Source: Prasinococcaceae sp. CCMP 1430
Taxonomy: Eukaryota; Plantae; Prasinodermophyta
Assembly (NCBI GenBank): GCA_013416795.1
Contig: RQSC01000015.1
Coordinates: forward strand, 617,218-681,217
Reading direction: 5' to 3'
Length of the DNA stretch: 64,000 nucleotides
Part shown: positions 56,865 to 62,918 of the stretch, one piece after another
Numbering within the stretch: the first letter of the stretch is position 1
Layout: every line of letters starts with the position of its first letter
Notes under the pieces: model-generated
What the model was told of the DNA's origin: nothing
Seen by the model: the letters and a program-made list of their open reading frames with translations, nothing else
Database searches by the model: none
Program-made: the position numbers and the translations under genes

Positions 56865-58325
56865 CTACCCGCGCCCGCTTTCCCCCTGTCGCGGCTCGCC
56901 GGTGCCCCCGAGCGCGATGTCGGCGACTTCCCGGCCGAGGGCGTCCGCGGGTCCAGCGGCCTTACCCATGCAGGCGCCTACGACGGTCACGCGCCCGGTA
57001 GCGCCCGCTCTCTCTGCCGCGGCCGCGCCGATGCCGCCCTGCGCGTCCACCGTCGTGACGCACGCCATCGAGCGAGCCGCGCCCACGAACGGGACGCTCG
57101 GCATGAGCGCGCGCAGCACCGACTCGAGCCACGCGGCGCTGTTCGGGTCGCCTTCAGAGGCAAGCCACTCGTCAATCTCAGCTCGGCCGACGTCTTCTGC
57201 CATGAAGTCGTTCGGGCCCCCACCGAGCTTGATGTAGTACGCATTCTCTCGCTCGGGGTAACGCACAGGTGGGAGTATGTAGACGCTACCCGACTCTACG
57301 CGGCCCTGCTCTCCACCGCTGTCGCCGCCACCGCCACCGAGCGCAAAAGCATATTTGATGGTCGGCATGTCTTTTAGCATTCCTTCGGCGACCGCGTCGT
57401 CCACCTGCAATAGCGCGACTGTGCGCCGCGACACACGGACGCCCGCAAGTGGATCGCTGCCCGTCGTGCCTTCCAGCGCACCGAAGAGGCCCCCGTCGTC
57501 CGCAGATGCTGCTAAGAGTGCGCGCGAGAGCGCCCCTCCTGCGATCACGCACCTTTCGGCATGCAGCACCTCACCCGACGCGAGGGACACTTCGACGCCG
57601 CCGCTCTCGGCACGCACCCTTGTCGCTTCGCCCGGCACGACGCGCAAGCGACCTGGGTGCTGTGCCTCAGCTGCCGCGTGGAAGGCCTCGATCATCGCCA
57701 GTGGATCGACATACCCGGCGCTCGAGTCGTAAACCGCAAAGTCAGAGCCAGGAGCCGGACTCAGATACGGCCAGCGGTCGTCGTCGCCGCCGCCCTCGCG
57801 GCCGTCGTTGCGCATTGCCGAAGACACATCCTCGAGCGACTCCCCTGCACCCTCCCGCGAGGCCTCGGCGCTCTCCCTCGCGCGCGTGACGAAATCCTTC
57901 GGACCGACCATCAGAGCGCCGCAGCACGTGAAGAAGCGCAACCCCGCGTCTGCCTCGATGCCGGCGAACGCGTCGAGCGACTGCGCGTTGCGCCGCGCCC
58001 AGTCGGTCCGCCCCTCTGCATCGGCCCCGCGCAGCAGGCGCGCGCGGTCAGCGTGGCTGCTCCCGAGGCCCACCGCTCTCCCATCGACAACGGTCACTGA
58101 CTTCACCCCGCGCTTGAGCAAGTGGCGCGCGGTTGCCGCGCCCAGTGGGCCGTCGCCAACCACGACCGCGGTCTCGTCACTCGGCCGACTGCCGCCTGCG
58201 CCCTCATCCGTGGCCGAATCCGCCCGTGCTGCCGCCATCCGCCGCGCGCGGCGCGGCGCGCGCCGCCCCGACTCGCCGATGGAGCTGACGCCACGGACGC
58301 CGCGGGCCACCGCGCACGCCGCCAT
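56865..58325 (-). CDS. FAD-dependent oxidoreductase (sarcosine oxidase/DAO family) with a transit-peptide-like N-terminus
   Basis: VVVGDGPLGAATARHL (variant GxGxxG), GSSHADRARLLR, AGYVDP, VIAGGA, VYILPPVRYP...YIKLGG, ACMGKAAGPADALG. Confidence 0.8.
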   Translation of the reverse strand: MAACAVARGVRGVSSIGESGRRAPRRARRMAAARADSATDEGAGGSRPSDETAVVVGDGPLGAATARHLLKRGVKSVTVVDGRAVGLGSSHADRARLLRGADAEGRTDWARRNAQSLDAFAGIEADAGLRFFTCCGALMVGPKDFVTRARESAEASREGAGESLEDVSSAMRNDGREGGGDDDRWPYLSPAPGSDFAVYDSSAGYVDPLAMIEAFHAAAEAQHPGRLRVVPGEATRVRAESGGVEVSLASGEVLHAERCVIAGGALSRALLAASADDGGLFGALEGTTGSDPLAGVRVSRRTVALLQVDDAVAEGMLKDMPTIKYAFALGGGGGDSGGEQGRVESGSVYILPPVRYPERENAYYIKLGGGPNDFMAEDVGRAEIDEWLASEGDPNSAAWLESVLRALMPSVPFVGAARSMACVTTVDAQGGIGAAAAERAGATGRVTVVGACMGKAAGPADALGREVADIALGGTGEPRQGESGRG

Positions 58326-58632
58326 CGACGGGCAGGTCGCCGCCACCGCACCCAGCCACTCGCTCACGCGCACGCGCGCGCGCGCGAGAGAGAGAGAGAG
58401 AGTGCCACCCCCCGCCACACCTGTCACATGCGAGCGCGCTCGCACACGCCATCGCAATCCCCTTATCCAAAATTCGCGGTGTGCGCGCCTGGCATTGGTA
58501 TCGGGGGATGCGGGCGGCGGCTGCGTGTGCGCACGCGTGGCGAGCGCCGGGGCGACGAGCGCGCCGGCGGCCTGCCTAAACTTGCGCCGCGCGCCGCGCC
58601 GCGCGTCGTCGCGCGCGAGGCGCGCCCTGTCT

Positions 58633-59892
58633 ATGGGGCGGATGGCGGGCGGCGGTGGCACGAAGCGTGCGCACAGCGGCGATGTGGCTGCTGCGGCGGC
58701 GACGGCGGCGGCGGCCGGGGGCGCCGCGGCCCAGGGCCTGAGCAAGGAGGAGCGCAAGGCGGCCAAGAAGGCGCGCAAAGAGGCGCGTCGCGCTGCACGG
58801 CGCGAGCTCATTGCGGCAGGCGACGCGTCTTTGCCCCCCGCCGCCCGTGGCGCGTCTTCGCCCCCCCCCGCCACCCAACTTGCGGATGAGCCGCAGAGCA
58901 CCGTGGGACCTTGCAACGTCTGCGGGCGCATGGGTCACCTTGGCCGCACCTGTCCAACGCGTGTGTGTCGGGCCTGCGGCAAACCCGGCCACCTGGCGAA
59001 GCACTGCCCCGCGAACGCCACGTGCTCGCATTGCGGTGTCAAGGGCCACCTACCGAAGCAGTGCACGTTCGGCGCGCAGCCGCACGAGCGCTTCCTGTAC
59101 TGCGGTGCGTTCGGCCAGCCGTGCGGATGCTTCGCGCGGCGATTCCTGGTGCCCCTGCGCCGAGCCGCTGCATCAGAAATCGACCCGGCCGACCTCCGCG
59201 CCAACGGCCGCACCGATGTTGGCACGGGCTGCGTGTCGTCTGGACTTTTCCTATCACAGTCGATGCGCGGCAATGCGAGCGTCACACTCGCGTTCGGCGG
59301 CGACAAGAAAGTAATAGAGGTGGGCGGCGCGACTACCCGCGGCCTACGGCCGGACGACGCGTCGGTGGCCGCGCGCCTACGCCTCGCCGCGAGGTCGCCG
59401 ATGAACGCCGAGGACGACGGCTTTGACGCGTCCTCGGGCACCGTGGTGGACGCCGAGCGCTACAGCGCGAGCCTCAAGCGCGGTTTTCGTGTGAGCGACG
59501 GCACGACCGAGGATGCCCTGCGCGAGATGATGGCGTCGAACGAGCGCGCAGGCGGTGCCCCGCCGTTGCTCATAATGCTCGACGCCAACGGCACGCCCAT
59601 CGAGGAGGCCTGCCGCCAGATGACAGCAGCTGCAAAGCGCGGCAAGGCGCCCGCGTCGCGAGGATGTGGCGTAGTCGTCCTGCTTGGCGACGACCGCGGC
59701 CTGCACGAGGACGATGAGCGCATGGCAGAACGGGTGGCGCAGGAGGCGGGCTCAAGCGTGCTCCGCGTGTCGCTAGGAAAGAATTCACTCTTCAGCATAC
59801 ACTCCATCATGATTGTGAACTGGGTCATGGACACACACATGCACTCGTGCAAACTCAAGGCCGCGCGAGACATGGGTGGGCGCTCGGGTTGA
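58633..59892 (+). CDS. trmY: TrmY-like SPOUT (m1-pseudouridine) methyltransferase fused to three CCHC zinc knuckles, single exon
   Basis: Knuckles CNVCGRMGHLGRTC, CRACGKPGHLAKHC, CSHCGVKGHLPKQC (58912-59064). TrmY-type motifs RRFLV, DL..NGRTDV..GCVSSGLFLSQSMR, GLRPDD, GFRV, IMLDANG, VVLLGDDRGLHEDDE, RVSLG...L...HSIMIVNWVMD. Confidence 0.85.
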   Translation: MGRMAGGGGTKRAHSGDVAAAAATAAAAGGAAAQGLSKEERKAAKKARKEARRAARRELIAAGDASLPPAARGASSPPPATQLADEPQSTVGPCNVCGRMGHLGRTCPTRVCRACGKPGHLAKHCPANATCSHCGVKGHLPKQCTFGAQPHERFLYCGAFGQPCGCFARRFLVPLRRAAASEIDPADLRANGRTDVGTGCVSSGLFLSQSMRGNASVTLAFGGDKKVIEVGGATTRGLRPDDASVAARLRLAARSPMNAEDDGFDASSGTVVDAERYSASLKRGFRVSDGTTEDALREMMASNERAGGAPPLLIMLDANGTPIEEACRQMTAAAKRGKAPASRGCGVVVLLGDDRGLHEDDERMAERVAQEAGSSVLRVSLGKNSLFSIHSIMIVNWVMDTHMHSCKLKAARDMGGRSG

Positions 59893-60040: not shown

Positions 60041-62918
60041 TCACGCCTCGAGCGCGGCCGGCGAGGATATTTCGCCGAGCGCCATGAAGTGCTCCACGAG
60101 CCCCTTGAGAAAGGACGAGGCGGACGCCGTCTCCGAGTCGGCCACCAGCGCGCAGTGCCGCCGCGCGCGCGTGACGGCAACGTTCATGCGCCGATCGTCC
60201 GCGAGAAAGCCCACCTGGTGCGCGTCGTTGCTGCGGACGAAGCTGATGATGATGGCCTCCTTCTCACGCCCCTGAAAGCCGTCAACGGTGCTCACCTCCA
60301 CCTCAGCGAGCGCACCACCAGCCTCGGCACGCAGCTCGCGTAGGCGCGTCACCTGGGCGGCATACGGCGCGATGACACCCACATCCTGTGCAGCGACGCC
60401 CTGCGCGAGCAACGAGCGCACGTGCGCCATAGCTAGTTGCGCCTCACCCTCGTTCCACTTGCTCTCGCCCTCGTCGCAGGCAGCCTCCTCGTACCCGTCG
60501 CAGCCAGCGGTATCGAAGAGCAGTAGCACGGGCAGACCGCCCTCATCGCCCCCCAGCGCCTGCTGAGGCTTTCCTCGCCCGTCGGTCTCTGCCCCGAGCA
60601 GCTGCGCGAGCGTCCGCCGTGCGACGCTGGGGTGCGGGCGCAAGGCGCCTTCGTACAGCGCACCGCTCGCCCACCCGCATATGTCGGCGTGCATGCGGTA
60701 CTGCACGGTGAGCATCCGCGTGACCTTCTCCCCAAGCACACGGTGCAGCCGCTGGAAGAGCGTTACCCCGAGCCCGCCCTTGTCCGCTTCCGTGCTTTGT
60801 ATTGTCGGCGGCAACTGCAGATGGTCACCTGCAAGCACCGCCTTGCGGGCATGCAGAAGCGCCAACCAGCATGCTGCCTCCAGCGCCTGCGCGGCCTCAT
60901 CCACTACGCACACATCGAACTCCATCCCGTGCAGATCACGCCCGGCGGCACCCATGAGCGTTGTGGCCACCACCTGAGCACCAGCAAGCACCTCCTGCAC
61001 CGCTGCGCGCTGCCGCACGCGCTGCTCCTTGCCCAGCCGCCGGAGCTCACGCCGCGCCTCACGCCGCTCAGCACCCTTTGCGGTCACGAGCGTGCACGTG
61101 AGGTCCTTCATCTCACGGGCGATGTCAGACGCCAGTTCTGAGTTGTCCGCGCGCGCCACGTGCGCATCCAGGCAATTTGATAGCACAGCAGGCAGCATGC
61201 GCGCAGGGTGCCCAACGCGCACCACTCCACAACGCGCAGGAGCCGCGGCCAGGCGTTCCACGAGGTTGTCCACCGCCGCGTTGGATGCTGCGCAGCAAAG
61301 CACGCGGTTGCCGCGTTGGATTTCCTGCAACACGTACTCAACGACAGCGGTGGTCTTGCCAGTGCCGGGTGGGCCGTGCACGAGCGCCACATGCTGCGCA
61401 GAGAGCGCGTGGCGCACGGCCTCGCGCTGCGAGGCGTCTAGGCCGCGGTTGATCCATGCTCCTTCCTTCACCTGCACGACATTGGCGTCCGCGAAGCGCG
61501 GTTCGGCACCACCAAAGGCTACGCGCACGAGATCACCAGCGACGCCCGCGCCGTCCTCCGCGCGCGCCAGGCGCTCGCAATGCTGCCGTACAAGGCCGGG
61601 CGCAGGTAAGCAGGCGGGCACGCCCCGCGGTGATTGCGGCACTCCGTCAGCTTCGCAGCGCAAGCACAGCATCGCTCTCGCTTGCATCCACGCACCTGTC
61701 TCAGTCGCGTGTGTGTGACTTCGTTGGCAAGCTTCACTACGCGCAGTGGCACGTTCATCTCGCCGTCGGGCGGATCCTCGGCAGCTACCACGATGGCCGC
61801 GTCGTACAGGCGGTACACCACGCCCTCGCACAGCACCGCACCGTCGCCCTTCATGCGGCGCACCTGCACAATGTCATTCTGACTGACGCGGTGCTCACCA
61901 AGCGTCGCACCAGCGGACGAGGGCACCAGTCTGAGCAGGGTACGGCCCAGTAGACCAGCCTCGGCGCTCTCTAGGCGCAGGCGCGGGATGCAGCGCCCGC
62001 GTGCTGCGAGGGCGCTGCGAGGGCTCGCGGTGTCGGCGTCAGCTGATGCCCGTCTCGTACGCACGTGGGCAAGCCAAGCCACCCCACCCCCTCCATTGCC
62101 CTGCGCGCTCGAGAAAGCATGCAAACAAGAATCTGCGCGCACCTCTTAGTGCCCGCATTGCTAGCCGCGTCGGCCTCTTCGACGGCTTCTGCTGCGGCGG
62201 CGAGCTCTGCCTTGTGTTCCTCCTCAAGCAACGGCAGCGTAGCCGCCGCGAAAGCCTGAGGCGTCAGCCGCCGGCCCTCACCCTCGCCGGCGCACTCCCC
62301 CGCGGCCAGTGCGTGCCAGCCCCCGCTCTCCCTCCCCACAGCACCGGACACCGCATCGCTGATGAGCTCGTGCAAGCGGTGCTCAGCGCTCGCACGGAGG
62401 TGATCCCATAGCACCGCGCACAGCGCAGCGTCGGTCGCCAATGCGTCGCTGTTCGGCTCGGCCGTACGACCGGGAGGGAGCGCGCCCGCGGTGGCTGCTG
62501 CAGTCGGCGCATCCATGTGCACCGACAGCCACACACGCCGCGTGCCGGCGTCGACATCGCCGACACTCGCATGGGCGAGGCCAAGGTCCTCAGCGACAGC
62601 GTGCAGCCAGCGGCGGCGCCGCGCGTCCAGAGACGCTGGGAACACCACCGAGTCGTAAGGGGCTGCAAGGCTCGCTGCGGGAGCATCGGCGGCGAGGGCG
62701 CGTGCACGTCAGCGGCACGCACGCGCACGCGCTTACGACGCAGTCGTACCTTCGAGTGCAGCAGACTCATCCTGAGCCCCTGTGCCGCCTTCTGTCGCCC
62801 CCGGCTTGCCAGGCCCTCTGCCGCCGGCCCTGGCCTCCTGCCTCGCGCGTCGCCGCGCAGCAAACGCCTCGCGCCGCCGCGTCGCTGCTCCTGCCTTGTC
62901 TTCCTTGCCGGATGGCAT
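60041..62918 (-). CDS. IGHMBP2: IGHMBP2/SMUBP-2-like SF1B (Upf1-family) helicase with an N-terminal R3H domain; 4 exons
   Basis: R3H VVFPASLDARRRRWLHAVAEDLGLAHASVG; domain 1B GRCIPRL..ESAEAGLLGRT...KLANEVT..R; LDASQ..AV, HGPPGTGKTT, CAASNAAVDNL, VRVGHPAR, DEAAQALE, GDHLQLPPTI, LTVQYRMH, TVDGFQGREKE, RRMNVAVTRARR. Introns 62749-62663, 62142-~62021, ~61694-~61582. Confidence 0.9.

What the first reader, a model, noticed from the sequence alone, without database searches (positions are those of the whole stretch)
58633..59892. Eukaryotic TrmY-like m1-pseudouridine methyltransferase fused to a triple CCHC zinc-knuckle RNA-binding module
Seen: an intronless ORF with a Lys/Arg-rich helix (LSKEERKAAKKARKEARRAARRE), three perfect CX2CX4HX4C knuckles, then a complete SPOUT domain. 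Its motifs (GR.D...CVS..LFLS..R, PDD, LGD..G+.E.DE, RVSLG..L...H.I.I+..V+D) match TrmY. Established: TrmY makes m1-pseudouridine at tRNA position 54 in Euryarchaeota, has uncharacterised bacterial homologues, and is normally a stand-alone ~200-aa domain. The characterised eukaryotic m1-pseudouridine methyltransferase is the different SPOUT enzyme Nep1/Emg1 (18S rRNA), and eukaryotic tRNA position 54 is usually m5U. Inference: this could be a horizontally acquired enzyme given an Air1/CNBP-like RNA-targeting module and a nuclear/nucleolar tag, i.e. an undescribed eukaryotic m1-pseudouridine writer, possibly with a new substrate.
Basis: partly seen in the sequence, partly recalled or inferred. 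Interest (0 to 1): 0.88.

Follow-up and report, generated by a model that had tools for sequence, protein, structure and literature searches.

The report
Algal TrmY-like RNA methyltransferase with zinc knuckles
This green alga has a real, conserved gene that joins three RNA-gripping zinc knuckles to an enzyme domain so far described only in archaea (TrmY, which methylates pseudouridine in transfer RNA); the same design occurs in many marine protists, so this enzyme family has an unstudied eukaryotic branch.

Summary
ORF 58633-59892 (+) encodes 419 aa: a Lys/Arg-rich helix, three perfect CX2CX4HX4C knuckles, then a complete PF04013 (TrmY/DUF358) SPOUT domain. Pfam gives 44.7 bits against a cut-off of 25.5. 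No other SPOUT family matched.

A high-confidence model (pLDDT 92) matches the TrmY-family crystal structures at Z 19-23, against Z 13 or less for Nep1/Emg1.

The gene is not a one-off. A profile search found 707 protein clusters (at 50% identity). The best 150 look eukaryotic. Named members come from dinoflagellates, diatoms and a choanoflagellate.

In 40 of 42 knuckle-bearing relatives the last knuckle sits 41-49 residues before the GRxD motif, joined by a conserved Cys-containing linker. This linker co-occurs with a C-terminal HxC tail, which suggests a second zinc site (inferred).

This looks like an old, diversified eukaryotic family.

Reviews state that TrmY is archaeal only, and I found no paper on a eukaryotic member.

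Likely function (inferred): SAM-dependent N1-methylation of pseudouridine, aimed at its RNA by the knuckles. The substrate is unknown. It scores far below NCBI's TrmY equivalog cut-off (60 against 183 bits).

Class: new variant of a known kind.

The parts
58633..59892 (+). Complete intronless coding sequence (419 aa plus stop) of the knuckle-TrmY-like protein. A second in-frame ATG lies at codon 4.
   Evidence: A near-identical 419-aa protein (one residue differs, aa 15) is called on four Tara Oceans scaffolds with the same downstream neighbours, and with the same upstream neighbours on the two scaffolds that reach that far. The 68%-identical relative P0013 aligns from start to stop.
58738..58818 (+). 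Lys/Arg-rich helix (about aa 36-62). It may be a nuclear or nucleolar signal, or a non-specific RNA-binding segment.
   Evidence: Modelled as a helix at aa 38-62. A similar basic stretch is present in P0013, and Lys-rich N-termini in P0003 and P0004. There is only a weak sub-threshold RRP14-like hit. The function is inferred.
58912..58953 (+). CCHC zinc knuckle 1 (aa 94-107).
   Evidence: Exact CX2CX4HX4C. Conserved in P0013, P0003 and P0004.
58966..59007 (+). CCHC zinc knuckle 2 (aa 112-125).
   Evidence: Exact CX2CX4HX4C. This is the best Pfam zf-CCHC stretch, aa 110-126.
59023..59064 (+). CCHC zinc knuckle 3 (aa 131-144). This is the knuckle kept throughout the knuckle-bearing group.
   Evidence: The last knuckle lies 41-49 aa before GRxD in 40 of 42 relatives. 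It is modelled at pLDDT of about 90 together with the SPOUT domain.
59065..59136 (+). Conserved linker (TFG..E.FL.C....CF.RRF) with Cys157, Cys163 and Cys165. It is the proposed N-terminal half of a second zinc site.
   Evidence: Linker conservation is shown. The Cys pair co-occurs with the C-terminal HxC tail: 44 have both, 31 have neither, 6 are discordant. The zinc site itself is inferred.
59137..59841 (+). TrmY-family SPOUT (trefoil-knot) methyltransferase domain, aa 169-403. It has two eukaryote-type insertions (about aa 255-283 and 335-347) relative to archaeal TrmY.
   Evidence: Pfam PF04013. NCBIfam TrmY model at 60 bits. PDB sequence hits 2qmm and 3aia. Fold matches: 2qmm Z 22.9, 3ai9 Z 22.1, 2qwv Z 19.2. 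Residues G192, R193, D195, S208, R212, G232, P240, G284, D353, G382 and D400 are shared with archaeal TrmY.
59842..59889 (+). C-terminal tail with His404-x-Cys406. It is the proposed second half of the discontinuous zinc site and is absent from archaeal TrmY.
   Evidence: H404 and C406 are invariant among the close relatives. Co-occurrence with the linker Cys pair is shown.

Best explanation
This is a genuine nuclear gene of a GC-rich marine green alga, probably Prasinoderma coloniale. It encodes a member of a large, previously undescribed eukaryotic branch of the TrmY/DUF358 SPOUT methyltransferase family.

The catalytic core keeps the family's knot motifs. It most likely uses S-adenosylmethionine to methylate N1 of a pseudouridine already present in RNA. 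This step is inferred from homology.

The isolated archaeal TrmY domain methylates almost any accessible pseudouridine, preferring pseudouridine followed by U. In the eukaryotic proteins, substrate choice is therefore probably supplied by the attached modules. Here those are a basic helix and three single-strand-RNA-binding CCHC knuckles. The last knuckle is held at a fixed distance from the catalytic domain by a conserved linker. That linker is probably clamped to the C-terminal tail by a second zinc ion.

The target RNA is unknown. The single most likely site is pseudouridine 54 in the T-loop of the tRNA subset that Pus10 modifies (about one chance in three). A nuclear or nucleolar non-tRNA target is about equally likely.
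For: Shown:
- Family assignment by sequence.
- Family assignment by fold: model pLDDT 92.2 and pTM 0.91. TrmY-family structures match at Z 19-23, rmsd 2.0-3.1 A over about 190 residues, against Nep1 at Z 13 or less. The first, lower-confidence model gave the same ranking.
- The residues most conserved between archaeal TrmY and 88 eukaryote-type sequences are kept here: GRxD, S208, R212, PD, LGDxxG, SLG and D400.
- All 82 scanned full-length relatives match PF04013.
- The knuckle-linker-SPOUT spacing is fixed.
- All knuckle-bearing rows fall on one side of a branch in the best tree, though support is weak at 29.
- Eukaryotic context and conserved microsynteny with a 68%-identical relative.
- Knuckle plus SPOUT on single transcripts in other eukaryotes.
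- The knuckle array resembles Air2.

From the literature:
- Mj1640 (TrmY) is specific for pseudouridine but promiscuous for context, in vitro and in human cells (PMC13171889).
- Eukaryotic PUS10 makes pseudouridine 54 in select tRNAs (PMC6380271).
Against: No biochemical data exist for any eukaryotic member.

The protein scores 60 bits against NCBI's TrmY equivalog cut-off of 183, so equivalence of function cannot be assumed.

Several positions that are near-invariant in the sampled archaea differ in the eukaryotic branch (for example His to Gln at 209 and Asp to Ser at 389). The archaeal sample was narrow.

The presence of Pus10 in this genome was not tested.

Localisation is inferred only from basic composition. 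The Ala/Gly-rich first 35 residues do not exclude an organellar presequence.

Confidence: 0.6

Rival explanations
1. It has the same fold but different chemistry or target. The eukaryotic branch may have shifted to another methylation (for example N3 of U or pseudouridine, or another base) on rRNA, snRNA or mRNA. In that case 'm1-pseudouridine writer' would be wrong even though it is an active SPOUT methyltransferase.
For: It scores far below the TrmY equivalog cut-off. There are systematic substitutions at positions near-invariant in the sampled archaea, and two insertions in the domain. The family has diversified strongly, with different appended modules and dinoflagellate gene models joined to FtsJ-like or RsmH rRNA methyltransferase domains. 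The next-closest folds include the m3U enzyme RsmE.
Against: The closest structures by a wide margin are TrmY-family proteins. The next closest, Nep1, is also an N1-pseudouridine methyltransferase. The most conserved motifs of TrmY are retained.
Confidence: 0.15
2. It is mainly a structural or chaperone RNA-binding factor whose methyltransferase activity is dispensable or lost. From my own knowledge, the essential role of Nep1 in ribosome assembly is likewise separable from its catalysis.
For: The protein has a basic N-terminus and multiple RNA-binding knuckles. There is a weak RRP14-like sub-threshold hit. The Nep1 precedent is from memory and was not checked here.
Against: The cofactor-knot motifs (LGDxxG, SLG) and GRxD are nearly invariant across 88 divergent sequences. 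That pattern is what an active enzyme under selection would show.
Confidence: 0.1
3. This is the first reader's scenario: a recent horizontal acquisition of a prokaryotic TrmY by this algal lineage, followed by local fusion to a knuckle module.
For: TrmY is typical of Euryarchaeota, with a few bacterial members (PMC1829167). The P. coloniale genome paper mentions gene transfer from bacteria (PMC7455551).
Against: The same knuckle-linker-SPOUT design, with the same spacing, occurs in dozens of divergent eukaryotic clusters, including dinoflagellates. Knuckle-less relatives occur in diatoms and a choanoflagellate. The window protein nests within a three-knuckle clade inside the knuckle group, and the sampled archaea sit across a 99* branch.
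Confidence: 0.05
4. It is an artefact: a chance ORF in GC-rich DNA, prokaryotic contamination, or a knuckle remnant of a retroelement Gag next to an unrelated gene.
For: Chance ORFs abound in this window. Retroviral nucleocapsids are among the sequence hits of the knuckle region. A gag-like ORF was noted elsewhere in the window.
Against: Conservation runs end to end in relatives, and the knuckle-to-domain spacing is fixed. The flanking genes are typical of eukaryotes: a Methyltransf_16 gene and an SMUBP-2-type helicase. The gene sits in the same context on independent Tara scaffolds. Population differences are mostly at third codon positions.
Confidence: 0.02

Closest known systems
Archaeal TrmY (Mj1640, HVO_1989; COG1901 / DUF358 / PF04013), the tRNA pseudouridine-54 N1-methyltransferase
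   Same: It has the same Pfam family and SPOUT knot fold, with best structural matches at Z 22. It shares the GRxD, PD(E/D), LGDxxG and SLG...H...D motifs.
   Different: The archaeal enzymes are stand-alone proteins of about 200 aa. This protein adds a basic helix, three CCHC knuckles, a Cys linker, two internal insertions and an HxC tail. It reaches only 60 of the 183 bits needed for NCBI's equivalog model. Its host is a eukaryote, whereas a review states the family is found only in archaea (PMC5372735).
Bacterial DUF358 protein VCA1059 of Vibrio cholerae (PDB 2qwv), uncharacterised
   Same: It has the same family and fold (Z 19.2).
   Different: It is stand-alone with no knuckles. Its relationship to the eukaryotic branch was not resolved, because no bacterial sequence could be put in the tree.
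Nep1/Emg1 (PF03587), the N1-pseudouridine methyltransferase of 18S rRNA in eukaryotes and archaea
   Same: It is a SPOUT enzyme with the same proposed chemistry and is the next-best structural match (Z 11.5-13).
   Different: It is a different family: there was no Pfam EMG1 hit even at E <= 1, identity is 10-15%, and Z is about 10 units lower than for TrmY structures.
Air1/Air2 of the TRAMP complex and other tandem CCHC-knuckle RNA binders (CNBP, TUT4/7, retroviral nucleocapsid)
   Same: Closely spaced CX2CX4HX4C knuckles. Air2 (PDB 2lli) is the best PDB sequence match over all three knuckles (E 1.5e-8).
   Different: The similarity is generic to knuckle arrays. Here the last knuckle is built into a methyltransferase through a conserved linker. 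Among the scans and searches run here, this combination appeared only in this family's own members.

Membership tests
TrmY / DUF358 / PF04013 (Methyltrn_RNA_2) | Matches the Pfam family model above its gathering score over the whole domain | tested here: met
   44.7 bits against 25.5, profile positions 2-195 of 198. All 82 scanned relatives also match.
TrmY / DUF358 / PF04013 (Methyltrn_RNA_2) | Reaches NCBIfam's equivalog cut-off for tRNA (pseudouridine54-N1)-methyltransferase TrmY (NF002560) | tested here: not met
   60.2 bits against a cut-off of 183. Relatives P0023 and P0003 score 80 and 74 bits. It is a homologue, not a demonstrable functional equivalent.
TrmY / DUF358 / PF04013 (Methyltrn_RNA_2) | SPOUT alpha/beta fold most similar to solved TrmY-family structures (a knot was not checked directly) | tested here: met
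   Model pLDDT 92.2. Matches: 2qmm Z 22.9, 3ai9 Z 22.1, 3aia Z 21.7, 2qwv Z 19.2. The next family, Nep1, is at Z 13.
TrmY / DUF358 / PF04013 (Methyltrn_RNA_2) | Conserved family motifs, including the cofactor-knot loops | tested here: met
   G192, R193, D195, S208, R212, G232, P240, D241, G284, D353, G382 and D400 are shared with 14 archaeal sequences and are near-invariant in 88 eukaryote-type sequences. Which of them are catalytic was not looked up in a primary source.
TrmY / DUF358 / PF04013 (Methyltrn_RNA_2) | Forms m1-pseudouridine at tRNA position 54, after Pus10 has made pseudouridine 54 | not testable with these tools
   This needs biochemistry. The presence of Pus10 in this genome could not be searched.
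TrmY / DUF358 / PF04013 (Methyltrn_RNA_2) | Homodimer, as in other SPOUT enzymes | not testable with these tools
   Only monomer prediction was available.
Nep1/Emg1 (PF03587) | Matches the EMG1 family model | tested here: not met
   No hit at E <= 1. There is only a fold-level resemblance at lower Z.
CCHC zinc knuckle (PF00098) | CX2CX4HX4C spacing and a match to the Pfam model | tested here: met
   Three exact knuckles. zf-CCHC scores E 3e-9 with three stretches. Air2 is the best PDB match.

The most novel reading that the evidence does not exclude
Many marine protists (green algae, dinoflagellates, diatoms, choanoflagellates) may carry an old, diversified family of TrmY-like pseudouridine-N1 methyltransferases. 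Different RNA-binding or targeting modules (zinc knuckles, RRM-like domains, plastid presequences) would direct these enzymes to different RNAs. Natural m1-pseudouridine would then exist in eukaryotic RNAs well beyond the single 18S rRNA site, possibly including tRNA position 54, plastid RNAs or nuclear RNAs.
Probability: 0.35. Interest if true: 0.85.

Novelty: new variant of a known kind. Interest (0 to 1): 0.62.

Why it matters
Reviews present TrmY as an archaeal speciality (PMC5372735, PMC9508554). In eukaryotes, m1-pseudouridine is known only as an intermediate at one 18S rRNA site.

A large eukaryotic TrmY-like family with built-in RNA-binding modules would change that picture. It would predict new natural m1-pseudouridine sites in ecologically important algae. 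It would also offer a natural example of how a promiscuous pseudouridine methyltransferase is given specificity. That is relevant to the use of Mj1640 as a pseudouridine-labelling tool (PMC13171889) and to interest in m1-pseudouridine generally.

The hypothesis is directly testable with a culturable strain and a small recombinant protein.

Tried and rejected
1. The search for homologous proteins with the full protein, with the SPOUT region alone and with the 89-sequence alignment returned only 5-7 relatives each. The exhaustive representative search was the productive one.

2. The search for related loci with a mixed archaeal and eukaryotic alignment failed, because no stretch was conserved enough. 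No bacterial or Asgard sequences could be added, so the origin question stays open.

3. The primary TrmY paper (PMC3285931) is not held. Catalytic residues are therefore argued from conservation, not from published mutagenesis.

4. Literature searches for TrmY, COG1901, DUF358 or PF04013, and for methylpseudouridine with dinoflagellate or microalga, found no report of a eukaryotic member or of m1-pseudouridine in these organisms.

5. Rfam and tRNA scans of the window found nothing.

6. Earlier scan notes hold nothing on Pus10, Trm2 or TrmY in this genome.

7. Rejected readings: Nep1/Emg1 membership, a retroelement origin of the knuckles, prokaryotic contamination, and a chance ORF. Reasons are given under the rival explanations.

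Full report
**1. What is in the sequence**

The window is about 70% G+C throughout. Long open frames therefore occur in every frame by chance. The frame from 58633 to 59892 (+) translates without interruption into 419 residues.

- a Lys/Arg-rich stretch at aa 36-58;
- three exact CX2CX4HX4C knuckles beginning at aa 94, 112 and 131;
- a C-terminal domain with the motifs GRTD...CVS, RPDD, LLGDDRGL and RVSLG...H...D.

Pfam assigns aa 169-401 to Methyltrn_RNA_2 (PF04013, the TrmY/DUF358 family). The E-value is 1.7e-11 and the score 44.7 bits against a cut-off of 25.5, covering almost the whole profile. Pfam also finds three zf-CCHC stretches. No other SPOUT family appears, even at E <= 1.

**2. 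Is it a real gene of a eukaryote?**

A near-identical 419-aa protein (one residue differs, aa 15) is called on four Tara Oceans metagenome scaffolds. Upstream lie a DAO-type oxidoreductase and a Methyltransf_16 gene (on the two scaffolds that reach that far). Downstream on all four lies a convergent AAA_11/AAA_12 helicase.

Across these scaffolds and the window, the variable sites within the gene are six third-codon positions and one first position, at codon 15, where amino-acid variants are seen. This is a small sample, but it points to purifying selection.

The next relative, P0013, is 68% identical and also comes from Tara scaffolds. It aligns from the first to the last residue. It keeps the SMUBP-2/IGHMBP2-type helicase as its downstream neighbour and sits beside a CYP38-like gene.

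An earlier agent's note names the genome as Prasinoderma coloniale. The published G+C of that genome, 69.8% (PMC7455551), fits the window. I did not verify the identity further.

**3. Family assignment**

By sequence:
- The best solved relatives are AF_1056 (2qmm) and MJ1640 (3aia, 3ai9), the characterised TrmY.
- NCBIfam's TrmY equivalog model is the only hit. It scores 60 bits against a cut-off of 183. The protein is a homologue, not a demonstrable equivalent.

By structure:
- A first model from seven sequences was mediocre (pLDDT 65) but already ranked TrmY-family structures first.
- A second model covered aa 125-419 and used an 89-sequence alignment. It reached pLDDT 92.2 and pTM 0.91, with the third knuckle modelled at about 90.
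- That model aligns to 2qmm, 3ai9, 3aia and the Vibrio protein 2qwv at Z 22.9-19.2, with rmsd 2.0-3.1 A over about 190 residues.
- Nep1/Emg1 follows at Z 11.5-13, and RsmE, TrmD and Trm56 at about 10-12.

**4. The family is large and eukaryotic**

A profile of the SPOUT domain was run against 1.84 billion representative proteins. It found 707 clusters at E <= 1e-3 and 316 at E <= 1e-10. The best 150 are almost all longer than a prokaryotic TrmY. The first archaeal-type 200-aa protein (P0157, Methanoperedens) appears only at E 7e-20.

Named members:
- Symbiodinium species, Effrenium voratum and Polarella glacialis. These are dinoflagellates of the knuckle type. They are annotated only as 'CCHC-type domain-containing protein', 'rsmH' or unnamed.
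- Skeletonema marinoi and S. dohrnii (diatoms).
- The choanoflagellate Didymoeca costata.
- MMETSP and EukProt transcripts. These include Trinity transcripts that carry knuckles and the SPOUT domain in one ORF (P0096; P0222).

All 82 full-length members scanned match PF04013.

**5. Architecture**

Among knuckle-bearing relatives, 31 have one knuckle, 6 have two and 5 have three. In 40 of 42 the last knuckle ends 41-49 residues before the GRxD motif. The connection is a conserved linker of the form C(T/S)FG..E.FL.C....CF.R.F.VPL.

A Cys pair in this linker (window C157 and C163/C165) co-occurs with a C-terminal D...HxC tail (window H404, C406). Both are present in 44 sequences and both absent in 31. 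Six are discordant, and most of those are N-terminally truncated gene models. Neither element exists in the archaeal sequences.

I infer a second, discontinuous Cys-Cys-His-Cys zinc site that ties the linker to the tail and fixes the last knuckle relative to the catalytic domain. I could not inspect model coordinates, so this remains an inference.

Other subfamilies lack knuckles:
- Some have RRM-like N-termini.
- The diatom proteins begin with a signal peptide followed by an ASAFAP-like motif. I read this as plastid targeting, from my own knowledge of diatom presequences.
- Some dinoflagellate gene models join the unit to FtsJ-like or RsmH methyltransferase domains. These may be merged gene models.

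**6. Phylogeny**

I built a quick maximum-likelihood tree of 102 domain sequences.
- The 14 archaeal rows fall on one side of a 99* branch.
- The window protein falls in a three-knuckle clade with P0013, P0003 and P0004 (99*).
- That clade lies inside a 40-row knuckle group (SH-aLRT 92).
- All knuckle-bearing rows together with their truncated relatives form one side of a branch in the best tree, but support is only 29. A single origin of the fusion is therefore compatible with the data, not shown.

The archaeal sample is narrow and no bacterial sequence could be included. The tree does not say where the eukaryotic branch came from.

**7. How it probably works**

Shown: the residues most conserved between archaeal TrmY and the eukaryotic branch are present here. 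They are G192, R193, D195, S208, R212, G232, P240, D241, G284, D353, G382 and D400, and they include the loops of the cofactor knot. They are near-invariant in 88 divergent sequences. This is the pattern of an active enzyme.

From the literature:
- Archaeal TrmY methylates N1 of pseudouridine 54 after Pus10 has made it (PMC7912444, PMC9508554).
- The isolated enzyme Mj1640 is strictly specific for pseudouridine. It is promiscuous for RNA context, prefers pseudouridine followed by U, and is active in human cells (PMC13171889).
- Human PUS10 makes pseudouridine 54 in a subset of tRNAs (PMC6380271).

Inferred: in the eukaryotic proteins, specificity is supplied by the added modules. Here these are the basic helix and an Air2-like knuckle array that binds single-stranded RNA, with the last knuckle rigidly positioned.

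The target is unknown. Pseudouridine 54 of Pus10-dependent tRNAs is the most likely single site. A nuclear or nucleolar RNA is about equally likely, given the basic N-termini of this clade.

**8. Comparison with what is known, and novelty**

[quoted passage not shown] A 2022 SPOUT review lists TrmY as archaeal with unclear domain architecture. The 2007 SPOUT survey mentions only a few bacterial members.

Full-text searches for TrmY, COG1901, DUF358 and PF04013 found no report of a eukaryotic member. Searches for methylpseudouridine with dinoflagellate or microalga found no report of m1-pseudouridine in these organisms.

Automatic pipelines already label some of these proteins 'tRNA pseudouridine-54 N-methylase'. 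The domain call itself is therefore not new. The new parts are:
- recognition of a large eukaryotic branch;
- its conserved knuckle-linker-SPOUT-tail design;
- the implication that eukaryotes have pseudouridine N1-methylation beyond Nep1.

I class it as a new variant of a known kind.

**9. Caveats**

- There is no biochemistry for any eukaryotic member.
- The presence of Pus10 and Trm2 in this genome was not tested.
- Localisation is inferred from composition only.
- The origin of the eukaryotic branch is unresolved.
- The zinc-clamp idea has not been verified structurally.
- Some long dinoflagellate architectures may be gene-model artefacts.

Noticed in passing
window 59065-59136 and 59842-59889; relatives P0003-P0159: A Cys pair in the pre-domain linker co-occurs with a C-terminal HxC tail across the eukaryotic TrmY-like family (44 both, 31 neither, 6 discordant). 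Both are absent from archaeal TrmY. This suggests a discontinuous second zinc site.
   Followed up: partly
proteins P0154, P0169, P0133, P0181, P0144, P0150 (Skeletonema and unnamed relatives): Knuckle-less TrmY-like paralogues start with a hydrophobic signal peptide followed by an ASAFAP-like motif (for example ISF|AP, AIAF|TP). This is typical of diatom plastid targeting, so a plastid RNA may be their substrate.
   Followed up: no
proteins P0052 (Symbiodinium), P0053, P0054: Dinoflagellate gene models join the knuckle-TrmY unit to an RRM plus an RsmH/MraW domain, or to an FtsJ-like methyltransferase domain. These are either real multi-enzyme RNA modifiers or merged tandem genes.
   Followed up: partly
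proteins P0037, P0038, P0040, P0045, P0049, P0062, P0094, P0097 and others: Many one-knuckle members share an N-terminal motif of the form AL.KKLR.I..L, which is absent from the window protein. Its role is unknown.
   Followed up: no
proteins P0116, P0155, P0177, P0182 (in the tree); P0176 and P0180 carry the same N-terminal motif: A separate subfamily carries an RRM-like N-terminus (motif VHVHGIPWE). Pfam RRM_1 did not score P0177. The four rows in the tree lie, unresolved, inside one 8-row group.
   Followed up: partly
window 60041-61831 (-); L064 6358-8859 (-): An SMUBP-2/IGHMBP2-type SF1 helicase lies convergent to the TrmY-like gene, both in the window and in the 68%-identical relative. 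This is conserved microsynteny. Whether it is functionally linked is unknown.
   Followed up: partly
window 56865-58931 (-) and 57808-59892 (+): The mechanical ORFs of the divergent DAO-type oxidoreductase gene and of the TrmY-like gene overlap by about 1.1 kb. This is only because GC-rich DNA lacks stop codons. The gene callers place the real starts about 360 bp apart (the DAO gene ends near 58272; the TrmY-like gene starts at 58633).
   Followed up: partly
protein P0091 (Didymoeca costata, EukProt): A choanoflagellate transcript encodes a knuckle-less member that still has the linker Cys pair and HxC tail. The family therefore reaches the opisthokont side of the eukaryotic tree.
   Followed up: no
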